A stretch of 64,000 nt of DNA from Octopus sinensis (taxonomy: Eukaryota). The position numbers and the translations under genes were made by a program. The DNA is taken from the NCBI RefSeq assembly GCF_006345805.1, contig NC_042999.1, forward strand, positions 147,994,001-148,058,000, read 5' to 3'. Of this stretch, positions 30 through 21,100 are shown one piece after another; the stretch's first letter is position 1; every line of letters begins with the position of its first letter. The notes under the pieces are model-generated. The model had not been told where the DNA came from and did no database searches. It was given only the letters and a program-made list of their open reading frames with translations.

Positions 30-163
30 AGTACAGTGTGGTGGCTCGTCGTGTTTGTCGTTGAAACAGAATGTATTGTTTCCACTACTTGGATTATGCT
101 TCTTGCAGAATGTAGGTTCTGTTTTTTCAACCTTTAATTCTTCTAAGCGTGTTGATACACGCC
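30..163 (-). CDS. Exon: trypsin-like domain up to the Cys191-equivalent
   Basis: ttttgaaattag|GG ... ACT|gtaagt. [44 protein letters not shown]; joins the previous exon as GFG-RVS. 134 nt, phase 1-0. Confidence 0.88.
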
Positions 164-3100
164 CTAATTTCAAAATTAAAGAAAATTAGAAGACGAAACA
201 GTTAATACAACAGGCATGTATAATAACATTTTAAATTTGATGAATCTAATTATTTCGAACAAAACCTTGGAATATAATTATCAGTTTGTTCTCATTCTTA
301 GCTTATATTTGTGCAAAGATACCAAATCTTGTGTTAAGCACATCAGCTGCATGTAAAAGTAAATTAACAATGGAAATAGAATGTTTAGGTACTAAGTCGT
401 TATAACTTATGTACATAGTTTATCATATTGATTTCAAAATTTTGACTCAAGTCCGGCAATATCGGAGGAGGGACGTAGGGATTCCGAAGGGTTGAAAAGA
501 AAGGTATTTCGCGATGGAATTTGAATTCAGAACAAAGGACAGACGAAATGAGGCTAAGCATTCTGCCCGGCGAGCTAACGACTCTGTCAGCTCAGCGCCT
601 TTACATTATATAATACTAGCAGCATAGCCCGGCGTTGCCCGGGTATGTAAGAAACTTTGTCGATAAGCAAAGCCCCTTACCTTTTTACCCTTTTTTGTGC
701 TCATTGAACCGTTATTTTGTAAAATGAAGCCTAAAAGGCATTAAGGTATTCAAGGCACCGTTCCCTTGCATGCATGAAGAAAATCTATGACAGTCAAAGT
801 GCATTTTCTGGTTTTGTTTAGCACACCCAACCCAGTTCTGCGGGATCAGTGTCGCGACGGGAGCGCATGGGTTGGGAGTTTGACAAGCAGAGGTGATAAG
901 GTTGCACATGCCGGCCCTTTTGACACCCCACCCGAACCCAAGTTGGGTTCAGACCACAGCTAAGCCCTACCTAATCCTAACTTAAGTCTAGCGAAAGGGG
1001 GCTCGGGAGCCTCTAGTAGGCAACGACTAATCCCGATCTAGTCCTTTCCCTCTAGGGAATGAAAGCGCATGTGTAGGTTGCAACGTCTTCTCTTCACTTC
1101 AATACTTCTGTGTATATGACGTTCCTAGCTGTCCCTTTGGACGAAAACATGAAACAGCTTGGCGAGCTCTCCTCTGTTGTGGTGTTTCGGCAGATCGAGC
1201 CGTGACTGTGTTTGCGGCGTCAGCAGCTTGGTGAGCTCTCTTCTGTTGAGGTGTTTCGGCAGATCGGGCCATGGCTGTGTTTGCGGCGTTAGCAGCTTGG
1301 CTAGTTCTCCTCTGATGTGGGGTTTCGACAGATCGTGAATGGCCCTTTGTTTGGGTTCTCGCGAGCTCTGCGGATTGAAGCACAGGAAGAAGCCCGCATG
1401 TTTTGGCTGGACTGTTGCTCTTTCGTCAACCTCGAGCGGAGCGAAGATCTATACGCTACGGCACTTGCAAGTCGGGTAGAACGGTCGCTAGTGGTTTCAG
1501 ATGCCCGAGCAGCGGCAGAACGGGAAGCTTTTTGCGAGAGGCGCAAGGCGGTTTCCTCGTGGGTCTCGCGTGCCCTTCTAGCCCTAGCAGCCGATACCTT
1601 GGCCGTCCGAGGGCTGAGGAGGGTCCTTCTCTTCTTGGGTGGCATTTTGGTGGATAGCAATGTGTTTGACAAAGGTGTAATAAAAAGGAACACGTGGGGT
1701 AAGTATCCCAAAATCTATAAAAATGTACAAAAACAGGAAAAAAGCAGGCAGCAATGTCAGTGACAACAAAGAAAAAGCGAAAAGTGACCAAACTGAACAA
1801 ACGAATGGAAAAGGTTTTTTGGTGCACACGACAAAAGCGGCTTATAATAAACCAAGAGTTTGCAAGTAGCGTCCGAGGACCCTTAGGGTACGTCAAAAAT
1901 TTAAGGTAAAACGTTTGGGGTGGTAGTTATAAAGAAAGTTTAAACAAAAAAAGTATTCGAATAACTTGTGGCTGCAGCAGCGATTAGCAGAAGTAGGCCA
2001 ACGTGTGAAGCGAGCATGTGTGAACCGAGAGAAAGAAGTGGGAGTCACAAACTATACGCGCACAACTGAGTGTGTCAGTGCATGTGATTGACCAAAGGGT
2101 GTTTAATTGAGAGCATTGTTCACCGTTTGGGGAGCCAATGGGATGAGCTGCAATCATCGTGTCAAGGACACGCGCGCACACAACCGCAAAAGCATCTACA
2201 GCCCAACATTGCTCGGATCTGAAGCAAAAGGAAAACATATGCCATTTCTTGTAACCTTTATGATAAAAGCGGCAAAAATCGACTAAATCGCCCGAAATCC
2301 GCCAACTATTTAACAAAAGTCAGTTTTGTAGGGTTCGCATGGTCGGTCTCAAAGTGATATGGTTTTGTCGATTTCTCCCAATACTTGTTAACTGCATTGA
2401 CAAAAGGTCGTTAGTTTGACATTTAATGCAAACTTGATGTCCAACATCGGTGCAGGGAAAATCTATGTGAACTTTCAGAAAATATCGCAGAAAAATCGGT
2501 TTGCTATATGTGCCACATATGATGTAATTAACCGATTTTTTCCAGTAATAACGTATCCTATTGGAATCAAAAGAGCCATATAGCTCCTTGGAGCGGACAT
2601 GATGCTCGCTGTGAATTTCAAAAAAAATTCCTGCCAATTTGTTAAAGATATTGTCGAAAATATGTCATCTTGAATTTGAACGCGATTTCCCAAAATGGCA
2701 TGATTTTATCGATTTTTTCTGATGATAAGGTATTGCATGGAAAACTAACGTCAGAATTAAGTTCTTTAGGGTAACATTAAGCTTCACCATCAGTTTGGTG
2801 AAAATCGATTGCAAGTTGCGAAAACTACGATGGAAAATGTGTTGCATATGATAAGCTTAGATTCTCGACCTCATGTCGAATTTATCGATTTTTTTCAGAA
2901 CTGGGAGAACTTTTCAAAATTTTCGCTGTGTTAGTTTTGAATTTTGACATTGGGCTATGTGTGTGTCAAGTTTCATCAGAATCGGTTGAAAGCCGTGGTC
3001 AGAGTGAGGGTACAACCTGACAGACACACAGACAGACAAACTGCCTTTTATATATAGAGAGATATATTATTTATTTATATGCTTCCTATATATATGTATT

Positions 3101-18100: not shown

Positions 18101-21100
18101 TGAGTGTGCGTGCGTGCATGTGTGTTTGCGTGTGCCTGTGTGTTTGTGTGTGTGTATGTATGTGTGTATTAGGTGTAGAGCAATTCCAAAAGACTATTAT
18201 ATTATGTAAGCAGCGTATGAAGAAGACGCAGCAGGAATGTTGTTTGAGCATTTGAAAAAACCATGACGTGCTACACTTTTAAATAAATTCTAATGTAAAT
18301 ACAAGACCAGAAATTTGGAAACGCAGTCGATTATATTGACTTCAGTACTTGAAAAGCACTATGTTTTAGAGAGCACAGATGGTTGAAAAGTAACGGTGAT
18401 CTTATTTTTTTACTGCCCACAAAGGGCTACACACAGAGGGGACAAACAAGGACAGACAAAGGGATTAAGTCGATTACATCGACTCCAGTGCGTAACTGGT
18501 ACTTATTATATCGACCCCGAAAGGATGAAAGGCAAAGTCGACCTCGGCGGAATTTAAACTCAGAACGTAGCGGCAGACGAAATACCGCTAAGCATATCGC
18601 CCGTCGTGCTAACGTTTGTGCCAGCTCACCGCCTTAAGTAAAGGTGATCTTGGCAGGATATGAAATCAGAAGGCAGAGCTGCAGCGAGTAAAATAAAACA
18701 TTTTGACAAGACAGTTTTTACCAGTCAATTGATCGTGTATTGTTAAGTAAAAAGATAAATAATAGTTCGTAGTTCATGAGATTAAAGTAGCAAGACAAGG
18801 CAGCGCGAATATCCATTATAAACGTATATAGACAGGAGATAATGTCATCAAAACATTGAAAATACTTACGTTAAACTTGAAGCAGAGGTAAGTACATGGT
18901 ACTTGTCTATTATTACACCAAGGCATAAATAATAGTAAGGATTATGAACCGCCACAGACCAGGGCCATTCTCCATCCAAAGCTAATTGTCCACCATTGCT
19001 CATTACACTGGATTCATTAGAGCTTATCATTCGAGTTCCACATTCTGAAATAATGAAAAATAGTTAAATAAACAAAGAAATAATGTAAAACAAAATATTT
19101 CAAATTTTTCCACAAAAGACAGTAATTATAAATGTGTTTTAAAAAACAAGTTTTAAGAACTACCTATTTGAAGTAGATTGAAGAATTCTAAAGCATTGGA
19201 AAATTGCACGAATTATTTTAAAAGCTGATTGAGATTTTTTTCTCTTCTTTGCATGAAAATTGAATTGTAATTGGCATCTAGACACAGTCATCATGACAAA
19301 GGAGACTAAGGGACCTTATATAAATATGTAGCCTAAATATAATTACATGCTTAATCTTTAGATTCATTTGACAATCCTATTTCTTAAATCATTCGGTGTA
19401 CCATCTATCATACATTTTGGATTACGTCACACGCTCAAACATAACATCCAGAATAATTTACTGCTAACTTATCACCTGTAATATCGATCACCTGCCTATT
19501 CTCCGCTACCACACTTGTTACGAATGTACATCTGCAAATTGTTAGCTATGATTTCTAGCAGAGATCGTCCTCGTCCAAATTACCTACTCTGCCTAAACCT
19601 CACTAATTGTCTATAAAAATGTTTTGTCACATGTGGAAGGATCCTGGACCCTCCACCACCATGTGAATGAAAGTGGACTAACGAATTTGAATAAAGGACA
19701 ACTGTGTGAATTGTCAGGGTATTTGACACTGTTGGTCGTGCGATGTGTGTTGGTTTAATATCGTACCTACATTCAAGTTGTACGGAGTGCGCTCTGTGTG
19801 AACATAATAATTCTGTAGTAGATTATTTTAGATACAACATCCAAATATTTATTTGGGTAACACTGTTTTACATCCGACGTGTACAAGCACGTCATATAAG
19901 TCACCATACTACTTTCCACATCTACATATAGGACTTTTTTCTTGTCTCACATTTCTTATTCAAAGGATCTGATTTTTACATATCATATAAGTTTTTATAA
20001 ATTTTTCTTGCTCGTGTTTCTCGAATGAATTTGGCTTAACAGGACAATTTCCTCGAAGAAAGATATGAATATCTTTCTTCACCCTTTCTATAAATGTTAG
20101 ACATTACACTCATTAAATGAAATTAGATTTAATGAAATTCAACTTACGTTGTTCACTACAATCCAACTTCGCGATGTTGCATTGGCTGTTAGAAAAGAGC
20201 AGAAGTTTTATTAATGCATTTATCATTGTTACAATCTTATCAGTATGATGTCACTATGTATCATTATAAGAGAGAAGTAGCCTGCAAAATTGATGACAAA
20301 CTGAATAACAAGGAAGAAGAGTTGTGATTCATAGTCAACAAAACATGGCGAAGTTGAATCAACACTTAAAACTTTTCAATCAGGAGGAAAATCCTATTTG
20401 TCTCACTCAATAGGCTGTTGGACTAAAAACTGAAGGTCGGCAGTTGTTTCCTTTCAATAAAACTGCACAGTCAATAACCAAGATGCTTTACTGTCGATAA
20501 TACATTCGATCTGAGGTAGAATTGCTTAGTTTTGCAACCAGTGCTAGTGCTGTAAAATTGGTGATTCTCTTGACTTGTTAAAGGTATTCATCCTGTTTTG
20601 ACTCTGATAGTAGTGCTAATATGACCTGTTCTAAAATTTATGAACATCGTTTTAAAAAAGACACAAACATAAATGTATCTGCGATTGCGTTAGTTTACCT
20701 TACTTGAAATGGGCTGAGTGTTTTGTAGAAACAAAACACCCATTTAGTTAAGATACTGAATTATCTGCTCATAGATTAAAAGATCAAATCTGCTGCAGTT
20801 TATTTGTAATGCACATAACTGCCAGATAGTAGGTACTCAGAATACATCACTAAAACAGAACTAAGTCAAGGATAGGTAAGTGAGAACAATACTTATAATA
20901 CTCTGAAATTTCATTTAGGAAACTTTTATCTATCGTTTGCCGCATATTATGAAGTTCCAGCTCTCAGAATGCATTTTGTTACCAGAGAGATTTTCAATAT
21001 TGTGTATATTATGCATAAATAAAGCTCAGTGCCACAAGCAGCAGAAGTAATTAATACATAACTCATGATTGTTTTATAAACCAGTGGAAATGTATACGAA

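What the first reader, a model, noticed from the sequence alone, without database searches (positions are those of the whole stretch)
30..19044. Trypsin-like domain is a pseudo-protease: His and Asp of the triad, Cys58 and the activation site are all lost
Seen in the spliced frame: TAAHC becomes TSASS (His-equivalent codon TCA at 18878-18880; the following Cys also becomes Ser, leaving the Cys42-equivalent unpaired). DIALL becomes GLVIL (GGT at 16654-16656). R-IVGG becomes SSVMSNGG, and the S1-pocket segment reads EPPHCT instead of kDaCq. Structural motifs (CG.R, GEWPW, P.CLP, C..GFG, other Cys) and the reading frame are intact, which argues for a functional non-catalytic protein rather than a dead gene. 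Established: serine protease homologues act as cofactors or scaffolds in invertebrate immune and developmental cascades. The Ser195 exon lies outside the window.
Basis: partly seen in the sequence, partly recalled or inferred. Interest (0 to 1): 0.7.

Follow-up and report, generated by a model that had tools for sequence, protein, structure and literature searches.

The report
Dead protease domain in octopus mucus protein
The trypsin-like exons encode a protease-shaped domain with no catalytic residues, which forms the tail of a very large octopus skin-mucus protein; it is made, kept intact and changes its amino acids about twice as fast as neutral DNA, so it looks like a fast-evolving binding module, not a dead gene.

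Summary
The window is Octopus sinensis. On its minus strand, exons 19044-18870, 16756-16542 and 163-30, plus a fourth exon 5.2 kb beyond the window, encode a complete chymotrypsin-fold domain. In it His57->Ser, Cys58->Ser, Asp102->Gly, Ser195->Gly, Gly193->Phe and the activation-site Arg->Met.

It is not a gene of its own. It is the C-terminal domain of a secreted SRCR-MAM-LDLa mosaic protein, 1,705 aa in the O. vulgaris model. Fifteen of its exons lie in the window, and NCBI splits it into two fragments.

O. vulgaris and O. bimaculoides orthologues also lack the triad. Octopod paralogues keep it.

It is not a dead gene:
- All 16 exons are open, with GT-AG introns.
- 39 of 40 cysteines are conserved.
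- There are no stop codons where 9-13 are expected, and all indels are in frame.
- In O. vulgaris, paralarval transcripts show the predicted junctions, and skin-mucus peptides include one from inside the domain.

Non-synonymous divergence in the domain (0.19) is twice the intron (0.099) and four-fold-site (0.083) divergence, and changes recur at the same sites.

Best reading: a non-catalytic binding module under positive selection. It is a new member of a known kind, the serine protease homologues.

The parts
18870..19044 (-). S1-like exon A. Encodes CGTR tether Cys, degenerate activation segment (Met 19003-19001 in place of P1 Arg/Lys), GEWPW, Cys42-equivalent TGC 18925-18923 (unpaired), TSASS with His57->Ser (18880-18878) and Cys58->Ser (18877-18875).
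16542..16756 (-). S1-like exon B. Encodes Asp102->Gly (GGT 16656-16654), P.CLP (Cys122-equivalent) and KCFAVGFG (Cys136-equivalent). The NCBI model XP_036357361.1 starts at the internal ATG 16620. The position orthologous to the O. vulgaris mucus peptide [11 protein letters not shown] lies here ([11 protein letters not shown] in O. sinensis).
30..163 (-). S1-like exon C. Shortened 148-loop, Cys168/Cys182 equivalents, EPPHCT (Pro189, Cys191). The donor gtaagt is at 29-24. Exon D (FLGGSY..., Ser195->Gly, stop codon) lies outside the window, 5,149-5,304 bases beyond position 1 (L001 31770-31925).
20148..20185 (-). Mini-exon ([13 protein letters not shown]) linking the stem to the S1-like domain.
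   Evidence: Present in the O. bimaculoides protein and in the O. vulgaris transcript.
21571..21675 (-). Stem region 2, second exon ([16 protein letters not shown]...). Unannotated in O. sinensis.
   Evidence: No Pfam match.
34040..34163 (-). Stem region 2, first exon ([23 protein letters not shown]...). Unannotated in O. sinensis.
37375..37485 (-). LDL-receptor class A repeat exon. Unannotated in O. sinensis.
   Evidence: Pfam PF00057, E = 2.8e-9.
40246..40377 (-). LDL-receptor class A repeat exon. Unannotated in O. sinensis.
41452..41594 (-). SRCR-like region 1, second exon. Unannotated in O. sinensis.
   Evidence: Weak SRCR match, 20.3 bits, below the 26.1 cut-off.
47980..48127 (-). SRCR-like region 1, first exon. 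This is the last exon of NCBI model XP_036357360.1, which reads through its donor site.
49388..49501 (-). LDL-receptor class A repeat exon.
   Evidence: Pfam PF00057.
54113..54412 (-). MAM domain, second exon.
   Evidence: Pfam PF00629, E = 2.5e-7, for the two exons joined.
54855..54989 (-). MAM domain, first exon.
58159..58269 (-). LDL-receptor class A repeat exon.
   Evidence: Pfam PF00057, E = 6.4e-9.
60522..60858 (-). Second half of a further MAM domain. The 5' limit is not fixed: the NCBI model starts at ATG 60840, while similarity to the paralogue runs to 60858. The gene continues upstream of the window, with an LDLa exon at window-equivalent 64499-64386.

Best explanation
The exons encode a catalytically dead chymotrypsin-fold (S1) domain. 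It is the C-terminal module of one large secreted mosaic glycoprotein: signal peptide, SRCR, about six MAM domains, LDLa repeats, two Cys-rich stem regions, then the S1-like domain.

**Origin.** The gene arose by duplication of an octopod 'MAM/LDLa + S1 protease' gene whose other copies still carry His/Asp/Ser.

**What was lost.** In this copy the whole catalytic apparatus is gone: His57, Asp102, Ser195, the oxyanion-hole Gly193, the 214-216 substrate strand, most of the 148-loop, the Cys42-Cys58 disulfide and the basic activation residue. The domain can therefore be neither cleaved into an active form nor hydrolyse anything. It stays single-chain and zymogen-like.

**Shown:**
- The fold and the other four cystines are preserved.
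- The reading frame is held open by selection.
- The orthologue in O. vulgaris is transcribed, spliced as predicted and present in skin mucus.
- Amino-acid replacements accumulate about twice as fast as neutral sites and recur at the same positions.

**Inferred:**
- The tether to the preceding stem through the CG.R cysteine.
- The domain now works as a protein- or ligand-binding module at the mucosal surface.
- Its former substrate-cleft face is the contact surface, driven to change by a variable partner such as a microbial molecule, or a protease or inhibitor.
- It may compete with, or shield, the still-catalytic paralogues that are also in mucus.
For: **Identity and loss of all catalytic residues.**

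**One gene.**
- A 16-exon, 819-codon open chain with all GT-AG introns.
- It is collinear with O. bimaculoides XP_014781924.1, whose chain is reproduced exactly from its locus.
- It is collinear with the O. vulgaris 1,705-aa model CAI9720287.1.
- A 1,274-aa O. vulgaris transcript ORF spans MAM/LDLa exons through to the same C-terminus.

**Orthology.** Introns align over 17.2 kb at 9.25% difference.

**Selection for an intact product.**
- No stop codons, against 8.8-12.7 expected; P(no stop) was 0 in 5,000 simulations.
- Four indels in the protein-guided codon alignment, all whole-codon.
- Introns open gaps at 0.0078 per base, so about 14 indels would be expected in the CDS.
- 39 of 40 Cys positions are conserved against 73.6% for other residues, Fisher P = 2e-4. 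The one lost is the partner-less Cys42.

**Expression (PMC11431876, Supplementary Data S1/S2).**
- OctVul6B006693P1: 17 peptides, 34 PSMs.
- Cluster-58773.205216: 20 peptides, 42 PSMs, 4 protein-unique.
- Cluster-58773.77635 (stem plus pseudo-protease): 27% coverage, 6 peptides.
- Peptide [11 protein letters not shown] lies within the domain.

**Fold.** AlphaFold2 pLDDT 87.1, pTM 0.88. Best PDB matches are chymotrypsinogen (TM 0.85), the TMPRSS2 zymogen and the enteropeptidase light chain.

**Fast evolution.**
- Domain dN is 0.194 (bootstrap 0.149-0.248), against intron 0.099 and four-fold sites 0.083.
- Codon positions 1, 2 and 3 differ at 0.204, 0.160 and 0.133.
- 14 of 17 sites that vary between O. 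sinensis and O. vulgaris also differ from O. bimaculoides; 5.1 expected, P = 6e-6.
- O. sinensis against O. vulgaris: 14 replacements in 225 residues of the domain, against 2 in the 221 residues of LDLa-MAM-LDLa, P = 0.004.
- Replacements concentrate in the loops that frame the cleft in active S1 enzymes: 39 of 72 against 29 of 153.

**Paralogues.** They keep the triad. One of them, A0A7E6ES13, is also listed in a mucus proteome.
Against: - No binding partner or activity has been measured, so the function is inferred.
- All expression evidence is from O. vulgaris, not from the O. sinensis animal whose genome this is. The peptides and transcripts carry O. vulgaris residues.
- Only one peptide was seen by me to lie inside the domain, because the peptide table is truncated in the held copy.
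- The 'cleft loop' set was drawn by me from chymotrypsin landmarks after I had seen the alignment. Substitutions are not significantly rarer in predicted strands than in coil (25% against 33%, P = 0.27).
- With two or three species no site-model likelihood test was possible, and no polymorphism data exist for a McDonald-Kreitman test.
- NG86 dS (0.163) is higher than the intron distance, so dN/dS alone is about 1. The case for positive selection rests on using introns and four-fold sites as the neutral yardstick.
- Four-fold sites are few: 152, with 12 changes.
- The N-terminal third of the O. sinensis gene lies outside the window and was not checked for integrity.
Confidence: 0.72

Rival explanations
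1. Passenger domain under relaxed constraint. The dead S1 domain has no ligand of its own. It is kept open and folded only because a misfolded or truncated C-terminus would block secretion of the large MAM/LDLa protein. The high replacement rate reflects loss of constraint, plus some non-selective boost in the exons.
For: - dN/dS by NG86 is about 1.
- Residues outside the cleft loops evolve at exactly the intron rate (dN 0.100).
- Former catalytic positions wander: position 57 is S or A, position 102 is G or N, position 195 is G or E.
- Substitutions are not significantly biased to coil.
- O. bimaculoides carries a truncated extra copy, P0001, showing that the domain can decay.
Against: - Relaxed constraint cannot push dN above the neutral rate. 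Domain dN of 0.194 has a bootstrap lower bound of 0.149, against intron 0.099 and four-fold sites 0.083.
- First and second codon positions change more than third positions.
- The same sites change repeatedly in independent lineages.
- Four-fold sites in the exons run at the intron rate, so there is no exon-wide mutational boost.
Confidence: 0.2
2. Decaying pseudogene. The trypsin-like exons are relics with no product, and the NCBI fragments are annotation noise.
For: - The O. sinensis annotation has only a 122-aa fragment starting at an internal ATG, with no UTR.
- dN/dS is near 1.
- Large retrotransposon-filled introns surround the exons.
- No transcript-derived protein for this gene turned up in the large protein collection.
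Against: - The reading frame is open over 16 exons with canonical splice sites.
- No stops where 9-13 are expected; only in-frame indels; 39 of 40 Cys kept.
- Intact orthologues exist in two other species.
- O. vulgaris transcripts and mucus peptides include the domain.
Confidence: 0.04
3. Exon-limited gene conversion. The excess exon divergence comes from patches copied in from diverged paralogous copies, not from selection on new mutations.
For: - Differences are clustered, and 57 of 582 codons carry two or three changes.
- Related copies exist in the same genomes (P0001, and the paralogues that keep the triad) on the same chromosome.
Against: - States matching triad-keeping paralogues are symmetric between the lineages (17 against 16), and 32 of 68 match none.
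- Conversion tracts would also raise four-fold-site divergence, which sits at the intron level.
- Intron flanks right up to the exons are well conserved.
Confidence: 0.06
4. Still an enzyme. The domain hydrolyses substrates with a non-canonical set of residues.
For: The fold and four disulfides are intact. A His (His190-equivalent) and several Ser/Asp residues lie near the old site.
Against: - All three triad residues are lost, as are Gly193, the 214-216 strand and the activation site.
- The residues now at those positions differ between close species, so no alternative catalytic set is conserved.
Confidence: 0.02

Closest known systems
[quoted passage not shown]
   Same: - Same mosaic order: SRCR, MAM repeats, LDLa, stem, LDLa x2, stem, CG.R-tethered S1 domain.
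- Same odd activation segment and Pro189.
- 35-41% identity in the S1 domain.
- Same chromosome.
- They form the sister clade in a neighbour-joining tree.
   Different: - They keep TAAHC, DIALL and GDSGG and a basic residue at the activation position.
- The window's gene and its orthologues have lost all of these.
- The window's gene also lacks 5 residues of the 148-loop and 2 residues at 217-219.
Arthropod serine protease homologues (clip-domain SPHs such as PPAF-II, masquerade, mosquito CLIPA proteins, Drosophila spheroide; PMC6901238, PMC5718610)
   Same: Extracellular S1-fold proteins without catalytic activity, retained and used in defence at body surfaces or in haemolymph.
   Different: - No clip domain here (no Pfam CLIP match).
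- Those proteins usually change only Ser195 and still need activating cleavage (PMC6901238). Here the whole triad and the cleavage site are gone.
- Here the domain is the tail of a MAM/LDLa/SRCR giant.
- No cascade role is shown.
Enteropeptidase, corin and other type II transmembrane serine proteases (LDLa-SRCR-S1 stem; enteropeptidase also has MAM)
   Same: - LDLa repeats and a Cys-rich stem directly before a CG.R-tethered S1 domain.
- Structural matches include the enteropeptidase light chain and the TMPRSS2 zymogen.
- Databases name the O. bimaculoides orthologue 'atrial natriuretic peptide-converting enzyme'.
   Different: - Those are active enzymes with R-IVGG activation and an N-terminal membrane anchor (my knowledge).
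- This protein is inactive, appears to start with a signal peptide (O. vulgaris N-terminus; not tested with a predictor) and is found in secreted mucus.
Scabies-mite inactivated protease paralogues (SMIPP-S) and vertebrate S1-fold binders (haptoglobin, HGF/MSP, azurocidin); recalled from memory, with the mite cysteine-protease analogue in PMC5956821
   Same: S1-fold proteins that have lost several triad residues and work by binding other proteins at a host-microbe or host-parasite interface. In the mite family the inactive copies have diversified.
   Different: Unrelated lineages. These are single-domain or kringle/CCP-linked proteins, not MAM/LDLa mosaics. No binding partner is known here.
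Vertebrate MALRD1 (diet1)
   Same: Alternating MAM and LDLa repeats, which is the source of the database name.
   Different: MALRD1 has no S1 domain (my knowledge). The octopod proteins are not its orthologues in any tested sense.

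Membership tests
Chymotrypsin-fold S1A domain (Pfam PF00089) | Profile match above the curated threshold over the whole domain | tested here: met
   63.6 bits against a cut-off of 20.6, covering profile positions 2-220 of 220, for the four spliced exons.
Chymotrypsin-fold S1A domain (Pfam PF00089) | Two beta-barrels plus a C-terminal helix | tested here: met
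   Model of the O. bimaculoides orthologue (70% identical): pLDDT 87.1, pTM 0.88, TM 0.85 to chymotrypsinogen 2cga. The O. sinensis sequence itself could not be submitted because it is spliced.
Chymotrypsin-fold S1A domain (Pfam PF00089) | Conserved cystines 1-122, 136-201, 168-182, 191-220 and 42-58 | tested here: inconclusive
   Cysteines for the first four pairs are present and conserved in three species. Cys58 is Ser, leaving Cys42 unpaired in O. sinensis and O. vulgaris, and Cys42 is lost in O. bimaculoides. Actual pairing cannot be tested from sequence.
Catalytically active serine protease | His57 | tested here: not met
   Ser (TCA, 18880-18878); Ala in O. bimaculoides.
Catalytically active serine protease | Asp102 | tested here: not met
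   Gly (GGT, 16656-16654); Asn in O. bimaculoides.
Catalytically active serine protease | Ser195 and oxyanion-hole Gly193 | tested here: not met
   Exon D outside the window reads C-T-F-L-G-G-S. Position 193 is Phe and position 195 is Gly; position 195 is Glu in O. vulgaris and O. bimaculoides.
Catalytically active serine protease | Activation cleavage site (basic P1 followed by Ile/Val16) | tested here: not met
   Met-Ser at the aligned position. The paralogues have Arg/Lys/Gln followed by His/Tyr/Phe/Asn.
Serine protease homologue / pseudo-protease | S1 fold with one or more triad residues replaced | tested here: met
Serine protease homologue / pseudo-protease | Retained and expressed, not decaying | tested here: met
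   Open frame, conserved Cys and absence of expected stops. Transcripts and mucus peptides of the O. vulgaris orthologue. O. sinensis RNA was not available.
Clip-domain SPH (arthropod immune cofactors) | N-terminal clip domain and activating cleavage | tested here: not met
   Pfam finds MAM, LDLa and SRCR but no clip domain in the O. vulgaris full-length protein or the window's exons. There is no basic cleavage residue.
Type II transmembrane serine protease (TTSP) / enteropeptidase-like mosaic | LDLa and SRCR stem before the S1 domain | tested here: inconclusive
   LDLa repeats are met. Stem region 1 gives only 20.3 bits to SRCR against a cut-off of 26.1. Stem region 2 gives no match.
Type II transmembrane serine protease (TTSP) / enteropeptidase-like mosaic | N-terminal signal-anchor (type II membrane topology) | not tested
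   The N-terminus lies outside the window. The O. vulgaris N-terminus has one hydrophobic stretch followed by SRCR, and the protein is recovered from secreted mucus. No topology predictor was on hand.
MAM/LDLa repeat protein (MALRD-like) | Alternating MAM and LDLa domains | tested here: met
   In the window: MAM (PF00629, E = 2.5e-7) and LDLa repeats (three exons with PF00057 matches; a fourth found by similarity). In the O. vulgaris orthologue: six MAM stretches and four LDLa.

The most novel reading that the evidence does not exclude
The former active-site face of this dead protease has become a hypervariable recognition surface of octopus mucosal defence. On this reading it is a germline-encoded, rapidly diversifying and polymorphic binder for microbial or parasite molecules, in an animal without adaptive immunity. 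It would be comparable in logic to snail FREPs or sea-urchin 185/333 proteins, but built on an S1 scaffold and displayed on a MAM/LDLa/SRCR mucus giant.
Probability: 0.22. Interest if true: 0.7.

Novelty: new member of a known kind. Interest (0 to 1): 0.45.

Why it matters
Serine protease homologues are common. A further one is not surprising in itself.

Three points are of use:
1. **Annotation.** It corrects the O. sinensis annotation. Two 'genes', one misnamed an elastase, plus seven unannotated exons, are one gene. It also flags an S1-like domain that database annotation of the O. vulgaris protein does not show.
2. **A defined mucus component.** It identifies a robustly detected octopus skin-mucus component, one that falls three- to four-fold in senescent animals (PMC11431876 supplement), as carrying a dead protease domain next to paralogues that keep the catalytic triad. 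That gives a natural active/inactive pair to study.
3. **Rate of change.** Replacement divergence of about twice the neutral yardstick across a whole 225-residue domain, with recurrent hits at the same sites, is uncommon. It makes a testable case for an arms-race interface in cephalopod mucosal immunity, a field with few defined molecules.

Tried and rejected
- **Word-indexed homologue search.** The first search with the three exons returned only two fragments and missed the true orthologue. The orthologue surfaced only through the upstream MAM/LDLa exons and through cluster membership.
- The same rule bars spliced sequences from structure prediction, so the O. bimaculoides orthologue was used for both.
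- **Loci not retrievable.** DNA of the O. bimaculoides paralogue locus and of the O. vulgaris locus could not be fetched because the gene ranges are too long. No codon-level comparison with O. vulgaris or with P0001 was therefore possible.
- **Alternative exons.** I looked for exons that would restore His or Asp, or a second trypsin-like gene in the window. tblastn with the domain, with P0001 and with a triad-keeping paralogue hits only exons A-C.
- **Compensated frameshifts.** I tested whether the divergent patches are compensated frameshifts. Free nucleotide alignment still gives 12.9% exon difference.
- **Secondary structure.** I tested whether substitutions avoid secondary structure. The difference was not significant.
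- **Gene conversion.** I tested conversion from triad-keeping paralogues and found no asymmetry.
- **dS and mutation rate.** I considered whether the high NG86 dS means a raised exon mutation rate. Four-fold sites say no.
- **Literature.** Searches for cephalopod serine protease homologues found nothing specific.
- **Fourth LDLa exon.** The motif scan missed the fourth LDLa repeat exon (40377-40246). tblastn found it.

Full report
**Where the window comes from.** The window is identical over 26,620 bases to Octopus sinensis assembly GCA_006345805.1, chromosome CM016861.1. Window position p corresponds to record position p + 147,994,000. The gene lies on the minus strand.

**Check of the observation.**
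- Read on the minus strand, 19044-18870 follows a ttcag acceptor. It encodes [57 protein letters not shown] and ends AC|gtaagt.
- 16756-16542 encodes [71 protein letters not shown].
- 163-30 encodes [44 protein letters not shown] and ends ACT|gtaagt.
- HMMER alignments to factor Xa and TMPRSS13 put TSASS on TAAHC and Y-G-L-V-I-L on D-F/Y-D-I-A-L.
- Joined, the exons match Pfam Trypsin end to end (63.6 bits).
- The missing exon was recovered from the same chromosome, 5.2 kb past the window's start (L001 31770-31925, acceptor ttttcatag). It reads FLGGSYVTCPNEHGKWTVYGIGHHTSCYATDLHPSVAFEVYDMKDWIEEEI-stop.
- Cys191 and Cys201 are nine residues apart, as in active enzymes. The register is therefore fixed: Gly193->Phe, Asp194->Leu, Ser195->Gly.

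**The gene is much larger than the finding.**
- NCBI annotates only a 122-aa 'chymotrypsin-like elastase family member 3B' (XP_036357361.1). It starts at an internal ATG at 16620 and has no UTR.
- Upstream on the same strand I found LDLa and MAM exons.
- NCBI calls these a separate 376-aa 'MALRD1-like' gene, XP_036357360.1.
- The O. bimaculoides protein XP_014781924.1 (592 aa, named 'atrial natriuretic peptide-converting enzyme') maps exon by exon, in order, onto the window's minus strand. It runs from the MAM exon at 54 kb to the trypsin-like exons.
- Its own 13-exon chain is reproduced exactly from its locus.
- Using it and the NCBI fragment as guides, the O. sinensis chain is 16 exons and 819 codons, with every intron GT-AG and a pyrimidine tract.
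- Seven of these exons are unannotated in O. sinensis.
- The O. vulgaris genome annotation has the same gene as one 1,705-aa model (CAI9720287.1 = A0AA36ASZ9). It has a hydrophobic N-terminal signal-like segment, SRCR, six MAM stretches and four LDLa, and it ends in the same pseudo-protease.
- Its gene spans 180 kb.
- The window therefore holds the 3' part of the gene. An LDLa exon sits just outside the window at 64499-64386.

**The loss of the triad is shared by orthologues and absent from paralogues.**
- O. vulgaris has TSASS / HGLAIL / CTFLEGS.
- O. bimaculoides has TPAAY / YNFAIL / CSFDEGS.
- An exhaustive HMMER scan of 1.84 billion representatives found only 1,990 relatives at E <= 0.001, which shows how far the domain has drifted.
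- The nearest relatives outside the orthologues are octopod mosaic proteins of the same architecture: O. sinensis XP_036357547.1, O. bimaculoides XP_052822552.1 and XP_014782808.1, and Argonauta GAB1606841.1. They are 35-41% identical.
- These keep TAAHC, DIALL and GDSGG.
- A neighbour-joining tree puts the triad-less sequences in one clade, sister to these.
- That clade also shares a 5-residue deletion in the 148-loop, a 2-residue deletion at 217-219 that removes the 214-216 substrate strand, and GWG->GFG.
- The triad-keeping paralogues already lack R-IVGG (they have R/K-[HYF]G[HQ]) and have Pro at 189.
- What is specific to this gene is Met in place of the basic residue.

**Dead gene or working protein?** Orthology of the two loci is firm. 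Twelve introns align over 17.2 kb with 9.25% mismatches (JC 0.099) and 0.0078 gap openings per base. Against that yardstick:
- The 582 aligned codons contain 248 differences and no stop codon. Random substitution at the observed or the intron rate gives 12.7 or 8.8 stops, and none of 5,000 trials was stop-free.
- The protein-guided codon alignment has four indels, all whole-codon, where about 14 would be expected.
- 39 of 40 cysteine positions are conserved, against 73.6% of other residues (P = 2e-4). The single loss is Cys42, whose partner Cys58 is missing in all species.
- The AlphaFold2 model of the O. bimaculoides domain is confident (pLDDT 87.1, pTM 0.88). It matches chymotrypsinogen, the TMPRSS2 zymogen and the enteropeptidase light chain at TM 0.80-0.85.

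**Expression.** The TMT proteome of O. vulgaris skin mucus (PMC11431876, Supplementary Data S1 and S2; PRIDE PXD052915) lists three entries for this gene.
- The genome model OctVul6B006693P1/A0AA36ASZ9: 13% coverage, 17 peptides, 34 PSMs.
- The ORF Cluster-58773.205216, 1,274 aa. It starts in the MAM region, includes the LDLa that lies just outside the window, and carries the pseudo-protease at its end. It has 22% coverage, 20 peptides, 42 PSMs and 4 protein-unique peptides. The wild/senescent abundance ratio is 4.6.
- The ORF Cluster-58773.77635, 284 aa, which is stem region 2 plus the whole pseudo-protease. It has 27% coverage, 6 peptides and 13 PSMs.

The two Cluster entries come from a de novo paralarval transcriptome. 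The 284-aa ORF is collinear, without any insertion or deletion, with my predicted junctions stem/mini-exon/A/B/C/D. The high-confidence peptide [R].[11 protein letters not shown].[I] lies in exon B, inside the domain. So the orthologue is transcribed, spliced as predicted, translated and secreted. This is evidence from the sister species, not from O. sinensis itself.

**Rate of evolution.**
- NG86 gives dN/dS of 0.96 for the gene and 1.19 for the domain (bootstrap 0.77-1.98).
- Taken alone that looks neutral, but the exons differ more than the introns. The CDS differs at 14.2% and the domain at 16.6%, against 9.25% for introns (binomial P = 1.5e-11 and 1.3e-9).
- Free nucleotide alignment, which would reveal compensated frameshifts, still gives 12.9%.
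- Four-fold degenerate sites differ at 7.9% (12 of 152), the same as introns. The exon mutation rate is therefore not raised, and NG86 dS (0.163) is inflated by multi-hit codons.
- Against either yardstick, replacement divergence is high: domain dN 0.194 (0.149-0.248) and rest of the protein 0.134 (0.106-0.165).
- In the domain, codon positions 1, 2 and 3 differ at 0.204, 0.160 and 0.133.
- Between the very close O. sinensis and O. vulgaris, the domain has 14 replacements in 225 residues. The 221-residue LDLa-MAM-LDLa block has 2 (P = 0.004).
- The O. vulgaris genome model and transcript themselves differ at 6 residues of the domain.
- Of 17 sites that vary among these three sequences, 14 also differ from O. 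bimaculoides (5.1 expected, P = 6e-6).
- Former catalytic positions are among the changing sites: 57 is S or A, 102 is G or N, 195 is G or E.
- Replacements are enriched in the segments that frame the substrate cleft in active S1 enzymes, namely the 37-, 60-, 99-, 148- and 174-loops, 192-198 and 214-225. The counts are 39 of 72 against 29 of 153. dN is 0.45 there and 0.10 elsewhere.
- I drew those segments after seeing the alignment, and strands are not significantly more conserved than coil. I treat the location as suggestive and the overall rate as solid.

**Explanation.**
- *Shown:* a complete S1 fold without any catalytic or activation machinery. It sits at the C-terminus of a secreted SRCR/MAM/LDLa mosaic, is kept intact by selection, is present in mucus, and is changing faster than neutral sequence.
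- *Inferred:* it acts by binding, not cutting. The old cleft face is the likely contact surface, and a variable partner drives the change. Paralogues that keep the catalytic triad are in the same secretion (A0A7E6ES13 in PMC10138644). A role as competitor, decoy or shield for them is therefore plausible but untested.
- *Main rival:* a passenger domain under relaxed constraint. It explains the wandering catalytic positions but not a replacement rate above neutral.
- *Other rivals:* pseudogene, residual enzyme and exon-limited gene conversion have little support.

**Comparison with what is known.**
- It works like the serine protease homologues of arthropods and the S1-fold binders of vertebrates and mites. 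It passes the simple membership test for a pseudo-protease: S1 fold, triad replaced, retained and expressed.
- It is not a clip-domain SPH, because it has no clip domain and no activating cleavage.
- Its stem resembles TTSPs and enteropeptidase, but the SRCR match is below threshold and the membrane anchor was not tested.
- The names the databases give it ('elastase 3B', 'atrial natriuretic peptide-converting enzyme', 'MALRD1/2-like') are similarity labels, not tested identities.
- I found no paper that notes the dead protease domain or its rate of change.

**Verdict.** The interpretation, a functional non-catalytic protein, is supported. The kind is known, so novelty is modest. The fast, recurrent change of a whole dead-protease domain in a mucus protein is the part worth following up.

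Noticed in passing
window 16620-60840 (minus strand): NCBI's O. sinensis annotation splits one gene into XP_036357360.1 ('MALRD1-like', 376 aa, reading through a donor site at 47980) and XP_036357361.1 ('chymotrypsin-like elastase 3B', 122 aa, from the internal ATG at 16620). Seven exons between them are unannotated (41594-41452, 40377-40246, 37485-37375, 34163-34040, 21675-21571, 20185-20148, 19044-18870).
   Followed up: yes
window 7127-9532 (+), 11171-14254 (-), 23740-25699 (-): Non-LTR retrotransposon ORFs with reverse-transcriptase domains sit inside the introns. Copies 13125-11104 and 25661-23673 are 90% alike, and 5117-3895 and 10367-9143 are 98% alike. They account for the B/C intron being 16.4 kb here against 1.3 kb in O. 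bimaculoides.
   Followed up: partly
related proteins P0010, P0166, P0015, P0020, P0009: The paralogues that keep His/Asp/Ser have R/K/Q-[HYFN]G[HQ] where S1 proteases have R-IVGG, and Pro at position 189. How, or whether, they are activated is unclear.
   Followed up: no
O. bimaculoides LOC106877509 (P0001/P0003; locus not retrievable): A second, truncated copy of the pseudo-protease domain alone (197 aa, ending early in exon D). Its gene model spans 222 kb on the strand opposite the orthologue. It branches outside the sinensis/vulgaris/bimaculoides orthologue group.
   Followed up: partly
O. vulgaris P0176 against transcript Cluster-58773.205216; window-equivalent 64499-60522: The O. vulgaris genome model skips part of a MAM domain, an LDLa repeat and a further MAM domain that the paralarval transcript includes. 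The exon at 60858-60522 in the window belongs to the skipped stretch. The true protein is probably about 240 residues longer than the 1,705-aa model.
   Followed up: partly
O. vulgaris P0176, residues 1480-1705: Pfam Trypsin (PF00089) is not reported for the full-length protein, either in the precomputed hits or in a fresh scan. Only DUF1986 and Trypsin_2 appear, weakly. The S1-like domain is therefore invisible in its database annotation.
   Followed up: no
Logan transcript proteins P0041 (1,974 aa) and P0038 (316 aa): Two further members of the same mosaic family, from unidentified species, have independently lost triad residues (THPKC / DDGGP and SSAQC / DEGGP). Loss of catalysis may be recurrent in this family.
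   Followed up: no
window 18039-18252, 35158-36213, 38119-38463, 62838-63169: Long (TG/CA)n-type and related low-complexity tracts lie in the introns. They give spurious Cys/Val-rich or His/Thr-rich open frames.
   Followed up: no
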